DNA of 64,000 nucleotides from Salpingoeca rosetta (Eukaryota > Protista > Choanoflagellata), in the NCBI GenBank assembly GCA_033442325.1, contig JAWQFM010000021.1, forward strand, positions 406,040-470,039, in the 5' to 3' direction. Position numbers and translations under genes: made by a program. The notes below the pieces were generated by a model. It was given only the letters and a program-made list of their open reading frames with translations. It made no database searches and was not told the origin of the DNA. Below are positions 51,220-61,104 of the stretch, piece by piece (the first letter of the stretch is position 1; every line of letters starts with the position of its first letter).

Positions 51220-53162
51220 ACGGACGAACCATGCCAGAAGTTCCACCCGCCCTGTGCGGCTGCGCCCTGATTCATCGCCTGCTGATATGACGGCGGCGCA
51301 CAGCCGGGGCCGCTCCCGGGGTACCCTGGGCATGATGATGATGATTGATTGATGGTTGGTGATGATGATTGATGGTGATGATTGGTGATTGATGATTGGT
51401 GATGATGATTGATGGTTGGTGAGGAGGCAATGGTGAGATGGTGGGATGGTTGGTGCAGTCACGTGCGAAAGGACAGTGGCGAACGGTCTCAACATCAGCA
51501 CGACCATCACTGTCCCTGTCACTGCGTGTGCGAGGAGTGTACCTGGTGGGGGCGCTGTGTTGTGGAAGCGGCCGCCTGGTCCAAAATCATTTGGATCCAT
51601 CGCACCCTCACCGTACATCTCCTGCGCAACGCGACCTGCAACAACGATGATGATGATGATGATGTGGACACGCAGACAGGAATGGCAAGGCGGATTATAG
51701 TGATGGTGGGGGAGATGAGAGCCAGCAGCGGTTGCAAACACGCACACACATAAGCACAAGCACACACACACATAGACATAAGCACGCACACCCACACAAG
51801 CGCACACATAAGCACGCACGCACACACACACACACACACACACACGCCAACTTACCTCGAGAGCACCACTTGTACATTTGGTAGGCAAGGAAGACAAGGA
51901 CCAAGATGAGAAGGAAGTTGCTGCCACCACCAGATGAACTGAAGACACGATGGAATGAAGAACAAGTGAGCAACGACGGCGATGGGCCATGTCGCCATGT
52001 CAAACGCAGACACAATCACATTCACACAAAGAGTCCCACACACCCAAACAAACAAACAAACAAACAAACAAAAACAAACAAACAAAACAAACACACAAAC
52101 AAACACACAAACAAACACACAAACAAACAAACAATCACACAAACAAACAAACACACACAAACAAACAAACAAACACACACACACACACACACAATAACAG
52201 CGACTCACGCGTGGCCTGCGTGGTGATGGTGGTGGTGGTGTTTGCCATGGCGGGAGCCGTAGTTGCCGGTGCTGTCCAGCGTGTACTCCACTCCGCAGCT
52301 GCCGGCCAGGATATACGGGTCGTCCGGGTAGTCGTACCCTTCGCACGTGACGTCTGTACGGCCAAGCTTCACTGAGTTGTCCAGCTCCGCCGTGCACTGC
52401 CACTGTACACACGCACAACAAGAGGCACCACCCATAATCAAAACAGGCGATGTGAGAGCGGCCAATTGGAAATGTGCGCTTGATCGCATTTTTGTACATG
52501 TGCGTGTGTGTGTACTTGTGTGTATGGGTTTGTGTGTGCTTGGAGAAGTGAGGCAGACCTGTGCAAGACAGGTTGAAACAAAATAGCGCAAAATTGCATG
52601 CACACACACACACATACACACACGCACATACACAGACATACACACACACACACACACACACACCTGCACACACACACACACACCTGCACGTCATTTCCGT
52701 CCCAGCCGACGTTTCGGCATTGCATGACGGTTGGCAGCACATCTCGATGGCAGTTGGCGGTGCCGTCGACACAGGTCATTTGAGGGACTGCACAGCAAGG
52801 TGATGAGGAGGTGTGGGAATGGAATGGGGCAAGTGAGCAAGCAAGTGAACAAGCAAACACACAAGTGCGAGCAGAGAGGGAGAGAGATGATACGCACTCA
52901 CACACACGCACGCAAAACACATGCACACATAAACACATACACACAACCACACAAGGCTTGCTTGGTATTTACCTGGACGCGAGCGCCTTCCGGTTGTCAT
53001 CTGGTCGGAGGACAGGGTGAGGACGGAGACATCTTTCAGGAGCGCCTTCTTTGCATGATGCGAGTGCTGCTGGTGGGACCAATGTGCGTGGCCCACGCAG
53101 GCCATCATCGTCAACACCAAAGCTGCAGCAAGCATGGCTGTGCCAGCCAGTTTCATCGACAT
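50342..53162 (-). CDS. SARAF: Store-operated calcium entry-associated regulatory factor (SARAF/TMEM66), multi-exon
   Basis: Signal peptide, then LLKDVSVLTL...MTTGRR, PQMTCVDG...VMQCRNVGWDGNDVQ|WQCTAELD...VTCEGYDYPDDPYILAGSCGVEYTL, TM FLLILVLVFLAY, GFGLGGLLGYL, and the characteristic C-terminus GYGGTRRR* (TAA 50342). Confidence 0.95.
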
Positions 53163-53171
53163 TTCCCCGTC

Positions 53172-53227
<56 letters not shown>

Positions 53228-53516
53228 TGTGTGTGTGTGTGTGTGTCGTTCACTCCTTCCTGTTTGCTGCGTTGATGTGATGAGTGTGAGAATGAACGCC
53301 GCGCCGTTCGCGAGATAGCCGGCTGGGGTCTGACGTGGGCGTTTGGTTGGTCTGTTGCTTGCTTTGCTTTCTTGCACGCTGTATTTGCCGTCGTTGCTGC
53401 TGCGTCATCCGCGTTGCATTTGCAAGTGCCTGCAATTGCAAAAACCCAAACACAGTTGCAAATTGCAATCACCTCTTGCCTGCATTTTATGCTGTTGGTT
53501 CCAAAATCAACTATGC

Positions 53517-53550
53517 GGGTCGGTTCCAATTTCAAAAGTATCTTAGGCAG
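53517..53550 (+). repeat. Left terminal inverted repeat (34 bp)
   Basis: gggtcggttccaatttcaaaagtatcttaggcag. Confidence 0.97.
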
Positions 53551-53815
53551 AAATGGCTGTTTCGAGATCTGAGGCGATCTTGGCGTTGTATGGGTGTCTG
53601 AGGTGTCAAACCATGATTTGCAGCCCTGCGTGTGCCCTGTCCATTGCACCCCTTGGGTTGACCATACACCTTGCCTGGACCGAGTTTGAGCGATTTTATT
53701 GAAAAGACATGGTGAGGGCAGGTGGTCGGTTATGCAGGCTGGGGGGGGGGGTTCAGGTAAAACTGTCAAGAAGAGGCCACAGCGCATCCATGCGCTTGCT
53801 TACACAAGGCACACG

Positions 53816-55173
53816 TTAAGTGGCGTTATCGTGAGTAGCTACATGCCGTGTGACTGTTGGTTGGTGAGGTAGTGGTGGTGGTGGTGGTGGTGGCGGCAGG
53901 GGCGGCAGGAGCGGCGACGAGTGTGCAGGCACGTCGTTGAACTGGGCCTCGTAGCCATCTGGGAAGAAGTTCTGCTGGTCCTCGTGTGACAGATGAGCAA
54001 GGTGCTTGTCACGGAGGGCACGCAAGTCTTGCTGGCGCTCTTTAGATATGTGGAAGCGCTCGAGAGGTGCAACGTGGCTGAACAGGTCCTCGCTGATGCT
54101 GGATGGGCGGAAGAGGGTCGTGTATGCATACCACTCCTCTGATGCTCGGGCGCGAAGCTGCACGGCCCCGGGCGCGGAGGGCCGGAACCAGAAATGGTGG
54201 AAGTCGCTGATGCCCGCGATCCTTCGAGCACCCGCGCGCTCAAAGGACTGCGAGAATGCGGATTGCTTGACGGTGGACGCGTCCACAGCGCTGTTTGTTC
54301 GGCTCGATCCGTCAATAACTTCCATAAACTGTCGCGGGTTGTACACGTCCTTGTTCTTGAAGGCATGCTTGAACACGCCAAAGTGGGCGTCGTTGGCAGC
54401 CTTGGTGTGGCCCGGGATCATGAAGTGCAGAATAATCTCCTGATGACGCAGGACTGAGCGCGCGCTGAGGTACTGCATCACACAGTTGTTCTTGTTCTGC
54501 GCCGCCGTGTTGTCCGCCAGGATGTACACACGCTCAGCCTCTGGGTAGCCCTCCAGCACGTGGTGCAGAAGCGACACCATGAAGTCTGCGCCCTGCACCA
54601 TGGCGCGTTGTGTCTCAGGAACAACGTAGTTGACTTGATGCGCCGTGCCCAAGTTGGCAATGCCGAAAACATCGACAGCCAAGCCGGTGGTGTAGTAGAT
54701 GTCTTTGGGCTCTTGGGTGAGATGTGGCAGCCTGCACGTCCCAGCCTTGTCCATGCTCAATGCCAAGGTGTTGGCGTGAAGGGCAGCGAAGCGTGCGTGG
54801 GCGTGGTAGAACGCACGCTCCAGTCGAGTGGGCAGCAAGTGCAGCTTGAGCTGGACGTGGTTCTGCAAGTCAGCAACCAGCATGCACGGCATCATCATGG
54901 GATGTGTTGATCGGCTGGCGGCCAAGTTGCAGAAAATTTCACAAAAACATGGCAAAATGGTCGGATAAAATTGTGGTGTGCGTGACAGCCCACCTTGGTT
55001 CGCCGCAACTCCATGCAGCGGTTGCAGAGGTCTGTGCGGTGCTTGTCGCTAGCAACCCAGGGCATATGCCGACGCCAGACGTACACAAAGTCCCCGTAGG
55101 AGAGGGCATCCCCTAGAACAACAAGCAGCACGACATGGGCCAAGCTGAGTGAGCGCTCGCTCGCGTTTGAGTC

Positions 55174-55224
<51 letters not shown>

Positions 55225-55735
55225 TGTGTGTGTGTATGTGTGTGTGTCTACTGTGGGGGGTGTTCCTTTGCACGAGCGGTGCGCTGACCTCCAGTAGTGC
55301 TTGGAGATGTGTCCTTGTGCACTCTCAGGTAGTCCTCATGCATTGCCTTCTTGGTCTTGTCAACGGGGAGGAGCAGCATCGGGCCCCGCTGTCCAGGGTT
55401 TGGCAGGCCATCCACCCGCGCGATGGCGTCAATCACTGCGAGGGCAAACTTGGTGCGAGGGTGCTTCACGTTCTTCGTGTTGCCCGGGCGCTTCGTTGGA
55501 GTCGGCACAACGTGCTCGTTGCGCAGGTCTTGAAGTGCGTTGGCAATCATGCGAGAGCCCATGCCCGTGACTTTCATGAACGACGTCTTGCACAAAGTTG
55601 CGCCTGACCATGGCACGCAGGGCATGTGTGCATAAAGCTGTGAGAATGAGGAGTGCTTTGGGAGCAAGTGGCGCGGCTTGCAGTGCCACTCATGTACGTG
55701 GCACCGACAAAGCATGACCTTCGTCAGCACGCAAG

Positions 55736-55799
<64 letters not shown>

Positions 55800-56546
55800 C
55801 AGCCCTCAGCAATCACGCACCTAACACGCACCTAACACACAGTACTTGGGGCGGAGTCGGTGCGTCGTGACGGGGACGGAGTCGTCATGATGCCGTTTGG
55901 CGCGGCTCTTGCGGGGCTTGCCTTTGGGGGGTGTGCCTGCCGCTCCAGAGACACACGTCGCCAGGAGGCTCTGGCATGCAATGCGCTTGGCATGCTGTGA
56001 CAGTCTGTCGTACTCTGCCCTGATCTGCTGCACGGTAGACCGCGGCAGAGAATCCAAGCATGTGCCCGAGGCGCACTTGCACTTCTTCTCAATGGCATGC
56101 GTGGGTGGAGCTGTGCGCTGTTGCCGGTAGATGCGTGCGTGTTCAGCTGATGTGTCGGCATCCTCATCCTCATCGTCCACCATTTCATCGTGATCGTCGT
56201 CCTCACACGCAGAACTATCGTGTGACTCGTCCTGCGTGCAGTGCGCGCCGTCTGGCAGTGCTGCGGACGATTTGGGCCGTGCATCGGATGTTGAGGTGCC
56301 CGACACCGTGTAGGACGTGCGCATATGCTGCAGGGCATGCCTCAGCTCATTGACCAGCGCTGCATCCACGCCGGGCAAGTCTGGCAGATCAAACTCCGTG
56401 TCCGTGAGTCGATGCACCAGCTCATCCACCGATTGTGCGATCTCCCCCGACGGCGGAAGAGCCACGTCTGGCCACCTCTCTGCACCCTCACCGCGCTCCC
56501 CATCGGATCCACCCAAGGGCAAACGGTGCGCGGCGCTGTCCATCAT
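53816..56546 (-). CDS. Sola-family DDD transposase, 4 exons, ~731 aa
   Basis: Exons 56546-55832, 55603-55289, 55112-54994 and 54862-53816 join through GT-AG introns in consistent phases (2,196 nt). Motifs: CKC...CL, YCVLG|ATLCKTSF, LSYGDFVYVW...RTDLCNRC, and the candidate catalytic triad LSMD, ILADNTAAQNKN, FMIPGHTKAANDAHFG. Confidence 0.88.
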
Positions 56547-56808
56547 TGAAGTCCCTTGGTGTGGTTGTGTGCGATTGGTATGTGTGCCAGTTTTCCGCCA
56601 TGAATTCAACCATCGGAGATTGTCAATCGATTTTCTCCGATTTCCAGTGAGCTTTCAAATTTTAGTGACATGGTCCATCGAACCAACCACCCCAACTTGC
56701 ATCAACCCGTTCTCGGCCCCACATACACCTCTGAGGCTCATCCGGGGCTCATTCGAACCGCCTCTTCGTGCTCTGTTCGCTCACGACATCCGCAGCAACT
56801 CAGCTCCC

Positions 56809-56842
56809 CTGCCTAAGATACTTTTGAAATTGGAACCGACCC
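56809..56842 (-). repeat. Right terminal inverted repeat (34 bp)
   Basis: ctgcctaagatacttttgaaattggaaccgaccc, the exact reverse complement of the left TIR. Confidence 0.97.
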
Positions 56843-56933
56843 ATGCTGCGGCGCTTGGCGAGCATCCTTGGTGAGTGTGAGTGCGTCCTTTGTGTGTGTG
56901 CGTGTGTCCTTGGTGAGAGTGAGAGAGAGAGAG

Positions 56934-56964
<31 letters not shown>

Positions 56965-56967
56965 CGT

Positions 56968-56998
<31 letters not shown>

Positions 56999-57000
56999 TT

Positions 57001-57034
<34 letters not shown>

Positions 57035-58586
57035 GGTTGAGACGTTAAAGGTCTTTGCAAGTGTGTTTGTGGATGTGTGCGTGCGTGTGTTTGTGCACGT
57101 GGTTGTTCCTGCTTCACTCCGTCTTCTCACCTCAACCACTCTCTCCCCTCAACCACGCCACAATCCATCCATGAATTGATGAAATCATGACATTGACACA
57201 GCCAGAGGCTCTCCGGAGCCACGCACTGAGGAAGAACCACCAGACGAGCATGTTGTGATTCCCCCCTCGGTGCAGGCCTTCTATCCCACCCATTTCCTCA
57301 ACGATTACGTGCAGGACGAGCCCGCCCCTTTCCCCTTGCACAAGGTAATCAAGAGCAGGCCACACACAACCTGCTTGCTTCCATCCACCCTTGTATCTTT
57401 TCACCCACCCTTCCTTCCCTCCCCTCCCTTCCTTCCTTCCTTCACCCACCCTTCCTTCCCTCCCCCCTCCCCTCCTTCCTTCCTCCCTCCCTTTCTTACT
57501 TCCTCCCTCCCTCCCTCCCTTTCTTACTTCCTTGTTGGGCGTTTTGGTTACCGCACGCAGCACTCCAGCTCATACGTGTAATGCTGTATCGCATTGTGTT
57601 CAGGATGATGACAGCTCGCGCTGGCTCCGCCTGACGTTGCTGCGCGCTCGATACGAGGCATACCTCGACTATGACATCAGCAGCAACCTCCCAGACGCCC
57701 AGGAATTCCTCCTCTTGTACGTGTGATTGTGTGTATTGGTTGAGGTGCAGCTGTGAAGGTGCATTCATGCAGCGTGAGCGGTTTGCGAGGATGCACATGG
57801 CCATGACAATGCTTTATTTTTACCCGACCGATCACTCGCTCACCCGATGCTCATCATCATCATCATCACCACCATCACCATCATCATTACCCCTACCGCC
57901 ATCATCCTCATCAACACGCACCCCGACCACTGCCGCTGCCACCTTTGACAGCGTGTTCACGCACTACCGCAACGATCCGGAGGTGCTGAGCGACCTGCTG
58001 CTGATGATGATCCGCACAAGCGCCGAGCTGCAGCAGACACCGGGCCTCCAACGCAGCAACCTCTACTTCGACTCCCGCTGGCTCAAGCTCCTGCCGCTGC
58101 TTGTCGAGGAGCTCGATAAGGCTTTTGATGATGAGCCTGAAGGGTACATCGCGCGCGAACTCGTGCCATGGATCTCAAGCATCATCTTCCACGCCGGGCC
58201 CTCTGCCGATATGTACCTCGACCGAGAACGTGCGTCACATGTCTGTTGCACAGAGGCAAAGGGAGGCAGAGGCGAGGGGATGCGTGTGTGTTTTGTTGCG
58301 CTCAGTTTTGTTTCAATGAATGCCGGTGTGCCTGACGTGGTTCCTGCATGTTTGTGACTGCGTACGTGCTTATGGTGTCAACACATCCGCACATGCATAT
58401 GGGCTCATCGCCACCTGTCCCACACGCCCCATCTTTACCATCACCACCACCAGGCGCCGTGTCGGTGCTGCTGCGCATCACAAAGTCCAGGTGCATCGGC
58501 GCCTCGCTCGCCGCTATCGTCCTCGCCCGCCTGGTCTGCACACGCACACACACACACACACAATGCTGCTGACATACGTGTATTCG

Positions 58587-58622
<36 letters not shown>

Positions 58623-58978
58623 CTGTGTGGCTGTGTGTGTGTGTGTGTGTGCGTACATCTCAGTCTTTACTGTATGCCTGCCCTTCCTATACGGCTGCGG
58701 TTGCATGCGACCACCATGTCCACTCTACTGGCACCCTGCCGTTCTCATCCATCACCACTTCTTCCTCTTCCCTTCAATGTGCAATGGCAGTACGGCGACG
58801 ATGCCGATCTTGCACAAGAGATTCTGTGCTGTGAACGCGACCTCAAAATGTGCATCCAATGTGAGCCCATGCCTGCAAGCATGCATGCATGCTTGCATGG
58901 TGTTTACGTTCCGCTGTGTGATTTGTTCTTCTTGACGCGCTTCCAATCGCCGCATTCCATGACATGCAACCAACCTCA

Positions 58979-59017
<39 letters not shown>

Positions 59018-59517
59018 CACACGCGCACATCACCACCACGACCACCGCTGCAGCTGCGCTGGACGGGTCTGTGTTTGAGGACCGCGAGTTTGGGTGCGGC
59101 CCCATCTGCGTCGCCCTCGCCCGTATCACCGCACACCAGCACGTCCGACGCGCCTTTGAGGAGCGGCTGCCAGACTTCATCAAGGTGCAGTCGGCAGTTG
59201 CTGTGGTGCAGTGCTTGGTGCTTGGTGCTTGGTGCTAGGTGTTTGGTGCTTGGTGGTGATGTGAGCAGCTGAGGGTGTTGGTCGAGGTAGTGGTGACGAT
59301 GGTTGGTTGGTGCTTGGTGAGATGGCATCAGTGGAAAGTATTCATGTTGCTTGTGCCATCTATCGCCAACCACCGCTGGTGTTGCTACCCTCCCACCCCT
59401 TACTGTCCCATCGCACGTGATCGCGTATGGTTGGTGTTGTCGCTGCCAATCAGATCCTGGAGCACAACCTGTGGGGCCCGCGCCATTTTTCCCTCGACTA
59501 CTACCGCATCGCACAGG

Positions 59518-59584
<67 letters not shown>

Positions 59585-60184
59585 TGTCTGTCTGTCTGTG
59601 TCTGTGTCTGTCTGTCTGTCTGTCTGTGTGTGTGTCTGTGTCTGTGTCTGTGTCTGTGTGTCTGTCTGTCTGTGTGTGGTCTCACTTTGCTGCGAGCTTG
59701 TCAACACCTCTCACCGCCCTACCCCCATCTCACCCAAACCTCCCCTTTTCCCCTTCCCCCTCCCCTCGCTCCCTCTCTTATCAACCCCACAGCTGCGTGC
59801 TGTCAGATATTGCGCAACTACGCGTCGTCCATCGTTTCAAACGCGATTTTGCACCGTGATGCAGCGCGCGCGCTGAAGAAGACGGCGCAGGAGCTCGCGA
59901 GCGAGACGGACATGTGTGAAGTTGCGTTCAATCTGCGGGTGGAGGTGCGACGAACGCAGCGCTTGCTGGCAAAAACAGCGAAGCAGCAGCACCACGACAG
60001 TGACAGTGGTGGCAGTGGTGACAGTGGCGAGAACGACAGCAAGAATGATGTTGATGGTGGTGATGATGATGATGGCGGTGTGAGTGAGGCTGCACCAGAC
60101 AGCCAACAAGACGAAGGTGGTGCCGACGATGAACATGGTGATGATGTTGAGGCGCAAGCGGAAGAGAGAGGTGGCTTGTTTTGA
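56843..60184 (+). CDS. Hypothetical helical (possibly ARM-like) protein with acidic tail, multi-exon; start codon is the right-hand TSD
   Basis: Exon 1 ATG CTG CGG CGC TTG GCG AGC ATC CTT G|gtgagt (56843-56870) splices in phase to cag|CC AGA GGC (57202), giving [16 protein letters not shown]... Later exons: [25 protein letters not shown]...[38 protein letters not shown]...GGLF*. Confidence 0.72.
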
Positions 60185-60728: not shown

Positions 60729-60790
<62 letters not shown>

Positions 60791-61104
60791 GTCCTACNNN
60801 NNNNNNNNNNNNNNNNNNNNNNNNNNNNNNNNNNNNNNNNNNNNNNNNNNNNNNNNNNNNNNNNNNNNNNNNNNNNNNNNNNNNNNNNNNNNNNNNNAAA
60901 AAAAAAAAAAGAAAAAAAAAAAAAAAATTGCGAACCTGCATATCGTACCGTCGTACGTCAATAAAAAAATAAAAGGTATAGTGTCCAAAAATCATGTACA
61001 CACGACAGCACATCGGCACCCCGCTAGCGGCGGCAGCACGGGTGCAGATCTTAATAATTCACATAAGTCGACGCAGAATAATCAGCCACATATTGCCTTG
61101 CACT

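What the first reader, a model, noticed from the sequence alone, without database searches (positions are those of the whole stretch)
53489..56870. Transposon inserted on a host start codon: the TSD regenerates the ATG but separates the gene from its promoter
Seen: the 4-bp TSD is ATGC. The right copy (56843-56846) is the first four bases of a clean exon 1 (MLRRLASIL, gtgagt donor, in-phase splice to 57202). The reconstructed empty site reads ...caactATGCTGCGG, with A at -3 and a second in-frame ATG 24 nt upstream (53489, MLLVPKST). Before insertion this gene was head-to-head with SARAF across ~350 bp, like three other pairs in the window. Inference: the ORF survives intact, but its native promoter and 5'UTR now lie 3.3 kb away. 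It is instead head-to-head with the transposase (ATG 56546, ~300 bp), so it is either silenced or driven by the element's end. Excision would make it switchable. This is a candidate promoter-swap or reversible gene switch.
Basis: partly seen in the sequence, partly recalled or inferred. Interest (0 to 1): 0.78.

Follow-up and report, generated by a model that had tools for sequence, protein, structure and literature searches.

The report
Sola1 transposon sitting on start codon
In the choanoflagellate Salpingoeca rosetta, a complete jumping gene has landed exactly on the start codon of a host gene: the coding sequence survives, every base of the gene's own upstream DNA now lies 3.3 kb away, and whether the element now drives the gene is untested.

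Summary
A 3,326-bp cut-and-paste transposon (53517-56842) has perfect 34-bp inverted ends. It is flanked by a 4-bp direct repeat, ATGC. The right ATGC supplies the annotated start codon of the host gene PTSG_07844. That gene encodes a 432-aa ARM/HEAT-like protein with relatives so far only in one other eukaryote. All nine exons match the annotated protein.

The element encodes PTSG_07843, a 697-aa DUF7869 (Sola1-type) transposase that is weakly transcribed. The sequence of this family is absent from the published S. rosetta transposon catalogue. Two related families in the same genome also start with GGGT and make 4-bp duplications, so ATGC is very probably a true target-site duplication.

Before insertion the gene lay head-to-head with the single-copy SARAF gene (PTSG_07842) across 350 bp. 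It now lies head-to-head with the transposase across 296 bp.

The functional reading is not tested. I obtained no RNA, chromatin or empty-site data for PTSG_07844. My best guess is that the element's end now acts as a two-way promoter. The idea of a reversible switch is weak: no copies are identical, no empty site was found, and excision would probably leave a footprint.

This is an ordinary kind of event in an unusually tidy form. Other readers of this scan noted similar start-adjacent transposons on other DNA of this genome.

The parts
52208..53162 (-). First three coding exons of SARAF (PTSG_07842); start codon at 53160-53162
   Evidence: Pfam PF06682 matches exons 52974-53162, 52684-52788 and 52208-52402 (E 1e-7, 1e-11, 1e-29). 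This is the only SARAF locus in the genome. PTSG_07842 is annotated TMEM66 in the Fairclough 2013 supplement.
53163..53512 (.). Native 350-bp divergent intergenic region. SARAF keeps it; PTSG_07844 has lost it.
   Evidence: Read directly from the sequence. The distance follows from the SARAF ATG and the left ATGC copy.
53489..53491 (+). Upstream ATG, in frame with the host ORF in the reconstructed empty site (would add MLLVPKST)
   Evidence: With the element present, this ATG opens only a 27-codon ORF that runs into the left end of the element.
53493..53509 (+). Host 17-mer GTTGGTTCCAAAATCAA that resembles the element's inverted end (14 of 17 bases)
   Evidence: Local alignment score 11. Only 0.1% of 2,927 other 40-bp windows reach that score.
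53513..53516 (+). Left copy of the target-site duplication ATGC
53517..56842 (.). Complete Sola1-like (DUF7869) DNA transposon, 3,326 bp
   Evidence: Inverted ends. Only this copy has both ends. The transposase matches Pfam PF25273 and is collinear with the published Sola1 element SrosS.
53517..53550 (+). Left terminal inverted repeat (34 bp)
53839..56546 (-). Transposase gene PTSG_07843 (697 aa). Coding blocks lie at about 56546-55830, 55604-55290, 55113-54997 and 54862-53933, with a short last piece ending at the stop codon 53839-53841.
   Evidence: P0005 retrieved by homology and mapped by tblastn. FPKM 1.4-5.4 in eight conditions.
56547..56842 (.). 296-bp right end: transposase 5' region plus inverted end. 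It is now the only DNA upstream of PTSG_07844 and is the candidate two-way promoter.
   Evidence: Geometry. There is no upstream ATG in the last 170 nt. Promoter activity is inferred, not shown.
56809..56842 (-). Right terminal inverted repeat (34 bp)
56843..56846 (+). Right copy of the duplication ATGC; it is also the first four bases of the annotated PTSG_07844 coding sequence
56843..60184 (+). PTSG_07844 coding region, nine exons: 56843-56870, 57202-57344, 57604-57716, 57952-58229, 58454-58533, 58791-58860, 59054-59184, 59454-59517, 59793-60184
   Evidence: Each exon translation matches P0003 in order, and all introns are GT-AG. Homology to P0002 starts in exon 2.

Best explanation
A Sola1-type (DUF7869) cut-and-paste transposon inserted by a 4-bp staggered cut at ATGC. 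That site was the first four bases of the PTSG_07844 coding sequence, inside a 350-bp two-way promoter region shared with SARAF.

Shown: the duplication leaves one ATGC on each side, so the right copy keeps an intact start codon and ORF. SARAF keeps the whole native intergenic region. PTSG_07844 keeps none of it.

Deduced: any PTSG_07844 mRNA that contains its start codon must begin inside the element or read through it.

Inferred as most likely: the 296-bp right end, which must hold the promoter of the weakly transcribed transposase gene PTSG_07843, fires in both directions and now serves as the promoter and 5' leader of PTSG_07844. The gene would then have moved from SARAF-coupled to transposase-coupled control.
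For: Structure:
- Perfect 34-bp inverted ends plus flanking ATGC.
- The annotated PTSG_07844 protein starts at 56843, and all nine exons match it.
- Exons 2 and 3 contain no in-frame ATG, and the exon 2 frame is closed by a stop at 57180, so an upstream coding exon is needed (read).

Family and duplication length:
- Pfam DUF7869, E 1.7e-15.
- Four coding blocks collinear with SrosS, which is classed Sola1 with a 4-bp duplication.
- SrosS copy 1 has the duplication GTTT.
- A third family on contig C12 has AACT and the end GGGTCGGG.

Activity of the element's own promoter:
- PTSG_07843 is this transposase. It has 14-49 reads and FPKM 1.4-5.4 in all eight RNA-seq conditions.

Transposase under purifying selection:
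- dN/dS 0-0.25 at dS 0.05-0.10 between copies.

Context from papers:
- 98% of S. rosetta gene models have transcript support (PMC4054682).
- Divergent active starts share one nucleosome-free region. DNA transposons are generally expressed, and some families show ATAC signal at both ends (PMC12572184).

Leader:
- No upstream ATG in the last 170 nt before 56843.
Against: - I obtained no transcript, start-site or chromatin data for PTSG_07844. It is absent from the stored parts of the expression tables, most of which were cut when stored.
- The base at -3 changes from A in the empty site to C after insertion, which may weaken translation.
- The transposase promoter is weak (FPKM below 6).
- Exon 1 encodes nine residues with no conservation. 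Homology to the only full-length relative starts at residue 33. Exon 1 therefore rests on the annotation and on the need for an ATG.
- No promoter motif could be shown in the right end.
Confidence: 0.5

Rival explanations
1. The insertion has silenced or strongly weakened PTSG_07844. The intact ORF only means that the insertion is too recent for decay to show.
For: All native upstream DNA is removed, and the -3 base changes from A to C. The inverted ends and the duplication are perfect, which fits a young insertion. The gene is narrowly distributed and of unknown function, with only two relatives among 1.84 billion representatives, so it may be dispensable.
Against: 98% of gene models have transcript support. 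The ORF and all eight GT-AG introns are intact. Copies of the family differ by 3-5% and none are identical, so a very recent jump is not indicated.
Confidence: 0.2
2. The native SARAF-side promoter still drives the gene. Transcripts read through the element, which is removed as a long intron in the 5' leader. The donor would be a GT inside the left inverted end (53538), and the acceptor the mirror-image AG inside the right end (56817).
For: The inverted ends place GT and AG symmetrically. Donor sites in this gene are loose after GT. SARAF's promoter is strong, FPKM 44-211.
Against: A 3.3-kb intron would be about ten times longer than this gene's own introns, which are 230-340 nt. The read-through would be antisense to the transposase. 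The 50 nt left behind would put ATGs 53489 and 53513 out of frame, upstream of the real start (calculated). There are no data.
Confidence: 0.08
3. The true pre-insertion start codon was ATG 53489, not the ATG in the duplication. The element would then have entered the coding sequence at codon 9 and cut off eight N-terminal residues. The present start would be simply the next usable ATG.
For: In the empty site, 53489 is in frame and would be met first by a scanning ribosome if transcription began upstream of it. The N-terminal 32 residues are not conserved, so their loss would be tolerated.
Against: ATG 53489 has T at -3, whereas 53513 has A at -3. The native transcription start is unknown. This rival changes the wording, not the consequence: the ORF survives and the promoter is displaced.
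Confidence: 0.15
4. The locus works as a reversible switch: the element excises and re-inserts often enough to toggle the gene between two promoters.
For: This is the only copy with both ends. Its transposase is intact, transcribed and under purifying selection.
Against: The genome holds no identical copies and only three copies in all, two of them truncated. No empty-site sequence appears in the assembly or the metagenome collection. Excision that keeps both ATGC copies would not restore the original leader (inference).
Confidence: 0.04

Closest known systems
SrosS, the Sola1 element of Salpingoeca rosetta (Southworth et al. 2019, PMC6875170)
   Same: Same genome and same superfamily. Both have a DUF7869 core with the ADNxxAQNKN and GHTK motifs, an intron-containing transposase gene, a length of about 3.3 kb, inverted ends of 32-34 bp that start with GGGT, a 4-bp duplication and a very low copy number.
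   Different: It is a different family. The transposases are about 30% identical over 257 aa, and the end sequences are unrelated after GGGT. The end sequence of the window's element does not occur in the paper's supplementary sequence files.
Mu1 insertion at maize hcf106, where an outward-reading promoter near the transposon end replaces the gene's promoter (Barkan and Martienssen 1991; from my own knowledge, not checked here)
   Same: A DNA transposon at the 5' end of a gene cuts it off from its promoter, and expression may then come from the element's end.
   Different: In maize, outward transcription was shown and depends on the element's epigenetic state. Here nothing is shown at the RNA level. 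The insertion is also exactly on the start codon rather than in the leader.
Other start-adjacent DNA transposons noted by this scan in S. rosetta (s1-443198 CEP120/eIF3g, s1-432603 MULE, s1-442278)
   Same: Cut-and-paste elements lie inside very short two-way promoters, 4-28 bp from a start codon, and the same question arises of whether they supply a promoter.
   Different: These are unchecked AI notes on other loci and other transposon families. Here the distance is zero, because the duplication itself carries the ATG.

Membership tests
Sola1 superfamily of DNA transposons | DDE transposase of the Sola1 type | tested here: met
   Pfam DUF7869 (PF25273), E 1.7e-15. The same model matches both copies of SrosS, which its authors class as Sola1 by a RepBase match. 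tblastn to SrosS gives four collinear blocks, best E 1.6e-36. I did not compare directly with RepBase Sola1 consensus sequences, which are not available here.
Sola1 superfamily of DNA transposons | 4-bp target-site duplication | tested here: met
   ATGC on both sides of the only complete copy. The same length is seen for SrosS (published; GTTT confirmed) and for the C12 family (AACT). Only one complete copy exists in this family, so there is no replication within it.
Sola1 superfamily of DNA transposons | Terminal inverted repeats | tested here: met
   34 of 34 bp complementary.
Active autonomous transposon | Intact transposase gene and evidence of recent movement | tested here: inconclusive
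   The gene is intact, annotated and weakly transcribed, with dN/dS well below 1. However, there are no identical copies, the other two copies are truncated, and no empty site was found.
Transposon-derived promoter (outward-reading promoter in a transposon end) | Host-gene transcripts that start inside the element end | not testable with these tools
Transposon spliced out as an intron | Spliced reads that join the two ends of the element | not testable with these tools
   Only the GT at 53538 and the AG at 56817 in the inverted ends can be seen.

The most novel reading that the evidence does not exclude
The 296-bp end of this Sola1-like element is a portable, compact two-way promoter. By landing on the start codon, it rewired a host gene from SARAF-coupled to transposase-coupled control. 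Sola1-type elements of S. rosetta may land on or next to start codons preferentially: a second possible case is SrosS copy 2 at PTSG_04296. They may be guided by host sequence that resembles their own ends.
Probability: 0.12. Interest if true: 0.6.

Novelty: new member of a known kind. Interest (0 to 1): 0.35.

Why it matters
S. rosetta is the main laboratory model for the closest living relatives of animals. Its promoters are short and poorly defined.

This locus is a natural experiment. One gene has had its entire upstream DNA swapped for 296 bp of transposon end, while its former partner SARAF keeps the old promoter. That gives a direct test of what a minimal two-way promoter is in this organism.

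The element is also an uncatalogued, apparently intact Sola1-like transposon whose transposase is under purifying selection. It could be of interest as a source of genetic tools.

If the gene proves to be silent, the case is simply a young, tolerated knock-down. Either way, the kind of event (a transposon at a gene's 5' end) is well known.

Tried and rejected
- **Is the element SrosS?** No. The ends and sequence differ, and the end string is absent from the paper's supplementary files. SrosS itself is present elsewhere in the genome.
- **Confirming the duplication from other copies.** Not possible. The C36 copy has a left end with three mismatches and a right end cut off at a GT repeat. The C2 copy is an internal fragment.
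- **Expression of PTSG_07844.** It appears in no main text. The 2025 chromatin paper has no held supplement. The gene is absent from the stored Fairclough tables, most of which were cut when stored.
- **Empty-site junction.** No match in the metagenome collection or in the genome itself.
- **Promoter motifs.** Two motifs proposed in other notes (GTCAATTTTGCC and TTTYYACAAT) and one I saw in the native spacer (GCAAWTTGCAA) are not enriched in the window and are not in the element's right end.
- **Function of PTSG_07844.** No Pfam family on any exon. The Atlas search gives only ARM/HEAT-like look-alikes.
- **SrosS copy 2 on a start codon.** The annotated PTSG_04296 starts 72 codons further down, and Pfam is blank. 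I keep this as a lead only.
- **Joined spliced model.** I never built or searched one. Exons were searched and compared one by one by reference, and the full protein came from the database.
- **Human DNA.** The contig is not human.
Full report
**What the sequence shows**

The window is choanoflagellate DNA, not human. The genome has 55.4 Mb in 68 pieces. It holds both published copies of the S. rosetta transposon SrosS with exact ends. Its proteins carry PTSG locus tags of Salpingoeca rosetta.

At 53517-53550 and 56809-56842 there is a perfect 34-bp inverted repeat. It encloses 3,326 bp and is flanked directly by ATGC on both sides. The bases next to the inverted ends do not pair, so the ends are sharply defined. 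The chance that two given 4-bp flanks are identical is 1/256.

**The element**

The minus strand carries four coding blocks. The last one matches Pfam DUF7869 (E 1.7e-15). A homology search returned the annotated protein PTSG_07843 (697 aa).

Southworth et al. 2019 (PMC6875170) describe one Sola1 element in this species, SrosS:
- 3,270 bp long
- 32-bp inverted ends
- a 4-bp duplication
- two copies

Its sequence differs from the window's element, and the window's end string is absent from the paper's supplementary sequence files. Even so, the two transposases share four collinear blocks (best E 1.6e-36, about 30% identity) and the same core motifs.

DUF7869 matches nine places in the genome. 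These are this family (C21, C36, C2), SrosS (C3, C10) and four other loci. One of those four, on C12, has the end GGGTCGGGTTCAGTTCGAA and a 4-bp duplication AACT. SrosS copy 1 has GTTT. So three related families in one genome start with GGGT and duplicate 4 bp.

This is the best support available for reading ATGC as a true target-site duplication. It cannot be checked within the family itself. The C36 copy has a left end with three mismatches and a right end cut off at a GT repeat. The C2 copy is an internal fragment.

**The host gene**

No exon matches a Pfam family. A search of 1.84 billion representative proteins with exon 4 found only two relatives. A word search with the longer one, P0002, then returned PTSG_07844 (P0003, 432 aa) from S. 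rosetta.

Its sequence starts [16 protein letters not shown]. I compared the nine exons one by one with this protein. All lie in order and all introns are GT-AG. I did not build or search a joined model.

The exon 2 frame is closed by a stop at 57180, and exons 2 and 3 have no in-frame ATG (read). An upstream coding exon is therefore needed.

Homology to P0002 begins only at residue 33. The nine residues of exon 1 are not conserved. Exon 1 rests on the annotation, on its consensus donor and on the need for a start codon.

The published catalogue was refined with RNA-seq, and 98% of its models have transcript support. I could not see the evidence for this particular model. The Atlas search suggests an ARM/HEAT-like helical repeat protein.

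**Neighbours and geometry**

SARAF is confirmed on three exons and is single-copy. It is therefore PTSG_07842, which the Fairclough 2013 supplement annotates as TMEM66.

- Its ATG (53162, minus strand) lies 350 bp from the left ATGC.
- After the insertion, SARAF keeps all 350 bp.
- PTSG_07844 keeps none, apart from the duplicated ATGC.
- Its start now lies 296 bp from the transposase start, head to head.
- The base at -3 changes from A (empty site) to C.
- The last 170 nt before ATG 56843 contain no upstream ATG.
- In the empty site, an in-frame ATG at 53489 would add eight residues.
- With the element present, that ATG opens only a 27-codon ORF that runs into the left end.

**Expression data that could be reached**

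In the Fairclough supplement, SARAF has FPKM 211, 127, 120 and 76 in three thecate samples and one swimmer sample. It has 54, 44, 55 and 44 in the chain and rosette colony samples.

PTSG_07843, the transposase, has 3.98, 5.37, 3.32 and 5.44 in the first four samples and 1.65, 1.69, 1.38 and 2.32 in the colony samples.

So the element's own promoter, which must lie in the 296-bp right end, is active at a low level. Its output moves in the same direction as SARAF's.

PTSG_07844 does not occur in the stored parts of these files, most of which were cut when stored. The central question therefore stays open.

**State of the family**

Copies differ by about 3-5%, and the differences are mostly synonymous:

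| Comparison | dN/dS |
|---|---|
| Exon 1, window copy against C36 | 0.25 |
| Exon 2, window copy against C36 and against C2 | 0 |
| Exon 4, window copy against C2 | 0.02 |

dS is 0.05-0.10 in these comparisons.

Most of the divergence therefore arose in lineages whose transposase was under selection. This fits a functional enzyme. It says little about when this copy inserted. There are no identical copies and no empty-site sequence, so current mobility is not shown.

**Mechanism**

*Shown:* a 4-bp staggered insertion at ATGC, an intact annotated ORF, a displaced native promoter and a weakly active transposase gene facing the host gene.

*Deduced:* any mRNA that carries ATG 56843 has a leader made of element sequence.

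*Inferred:* the right end works as a two-way promoter. The background for this is published. In S. rosetta, divergent active starts share one nucleosome-free region. DNA transposons are generally expressed and low in H3K27me3. Some families show ATAC signal at both ends (PMC12572184).

I put about 0.5 on this reading. The rivals get:
- 0.2 on silencing or strong weakening
- under 0.1 on read-through with the element spliced out (GT at 53538, AG at 56817, 50 nt left behind)
- about 0.04 on a working reversible switch

A further rival, which I put at 0.15, overlaps these four rather than competing with them: ATG 53489 rather than the ATG in the duplication may have been the original start, so that the element entered the coding sequence at codon 9. 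This changes the wording, not the consequence.

An excision that leaves both ATGC copies would shift ATGs 53489 and 53513 out of frame with the gene. A return to the old state would therefore not be exact (inference).

**Comparison and novelty**

The element is a new family of a known superfamily. A transposon at a gene's 5' end that may supply a promoter is a known kind of event. The maize Mu1/hcf106 case is the classic one (from my own knowledge).

Other readers of this scan noted similar start-adjacent transposons elsewhere in this genome. I did not test those notes.

What is unusual here is the exactness: the duplication itself carries the ATG, so the host gene keeps zero native upstream bases.

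**Leads seen in passing**

The host DNA just left of the insertion (53493-53509) matches the element's end at 14 of 17 bases, a score in the top 0.1% of windows.

SrosS copy 2 has a duplication ACAT. On the flanking gene's strand this reads ATGT. It opens a 9-codon ORF with a GT donor. Two further small exons are in phase with PTSG_04296. The annotated start of that gene, however, lies 72 codons further down. This may be a second case of the same geometry, but it is not supported by the annotation or by homology.

Noticed in passing
window 53493-53509: The host sequence GTTGGTTCCAAAATCAA lies 4 bp left of the duplication. It matches the element's inverted end at 14 of 17 bases, in the same orientation. 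Only 0.1% of other 40-bp windows score as high. It could be a target-choice cue, a remnant of an older insertion, or chance.
   Followed up: partly
G000:C10:56592-60051 (SrosS copy 2) and its left flank, L042:3900-4595 minus strand: The duplication is ACAT, with one extra T at the left junction. Read outward, the flank gives ATG TCG AAG GAT GTG CGG TTC ATC CAG followed by a GT donor and a CA repeat. This exon and two more small exons are in phase with PTSG_04296. That gene's annotated start (MAQPFVL) lies 72 codons further down. It may be a second Sola1 insertion on a former start codon, but annotation and Pfam give no support.
   Followed up: partly
G000:C12:1416705-1419179 (L043:4206-6680); also C14:121811, C35:151765, C14:826835: There are four further DUF7869 (Sola1-like) loci besides this family and SrosS. 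The C12 element is 2,475 bp with a 731-aa open frame, the end GGGTCGGGTTCAGTTCGAA and a 4-bp duplication AACT. S. rosetta seems to hold more Sola1-like lineages than the single family in the published survey.
   Followed up: partly
window 53819-56546 against L034 (C36) and L035 (C2): Copies of the transposase gene differ almost only at synonymous sites (dN/dS 0-0.25, dS 0.05-0.10), even against the truncated C2 fragment. The divergence therefore predates the truncations and arose under selection.
   Followed up: yes
window 52208-56546 (PTSG_07842 and PTSG_07843): The transposase and the downstream, same-strand SARAF gene show the same direction of regulation in published RNA-seq. Both are two- to four-fold higher in thecate and swimmer cells than in colonies, although their levels differ about 40-fold.
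   Followed up: no
window 55160-55260, 55730-55800, 56900-57030: Long GT/CA dinucleotide repeats fill two transposase introns and intron 1 of PTSG_07844. They swamp generic repeat finders. In the C36 copy, such a repeat replaces the right end of the element.
   Followed up: no
window about 60790-60900: A run of N (an assembly gap) lies just downstream of the PTSG_07844 stop codon.
   Followed up: no
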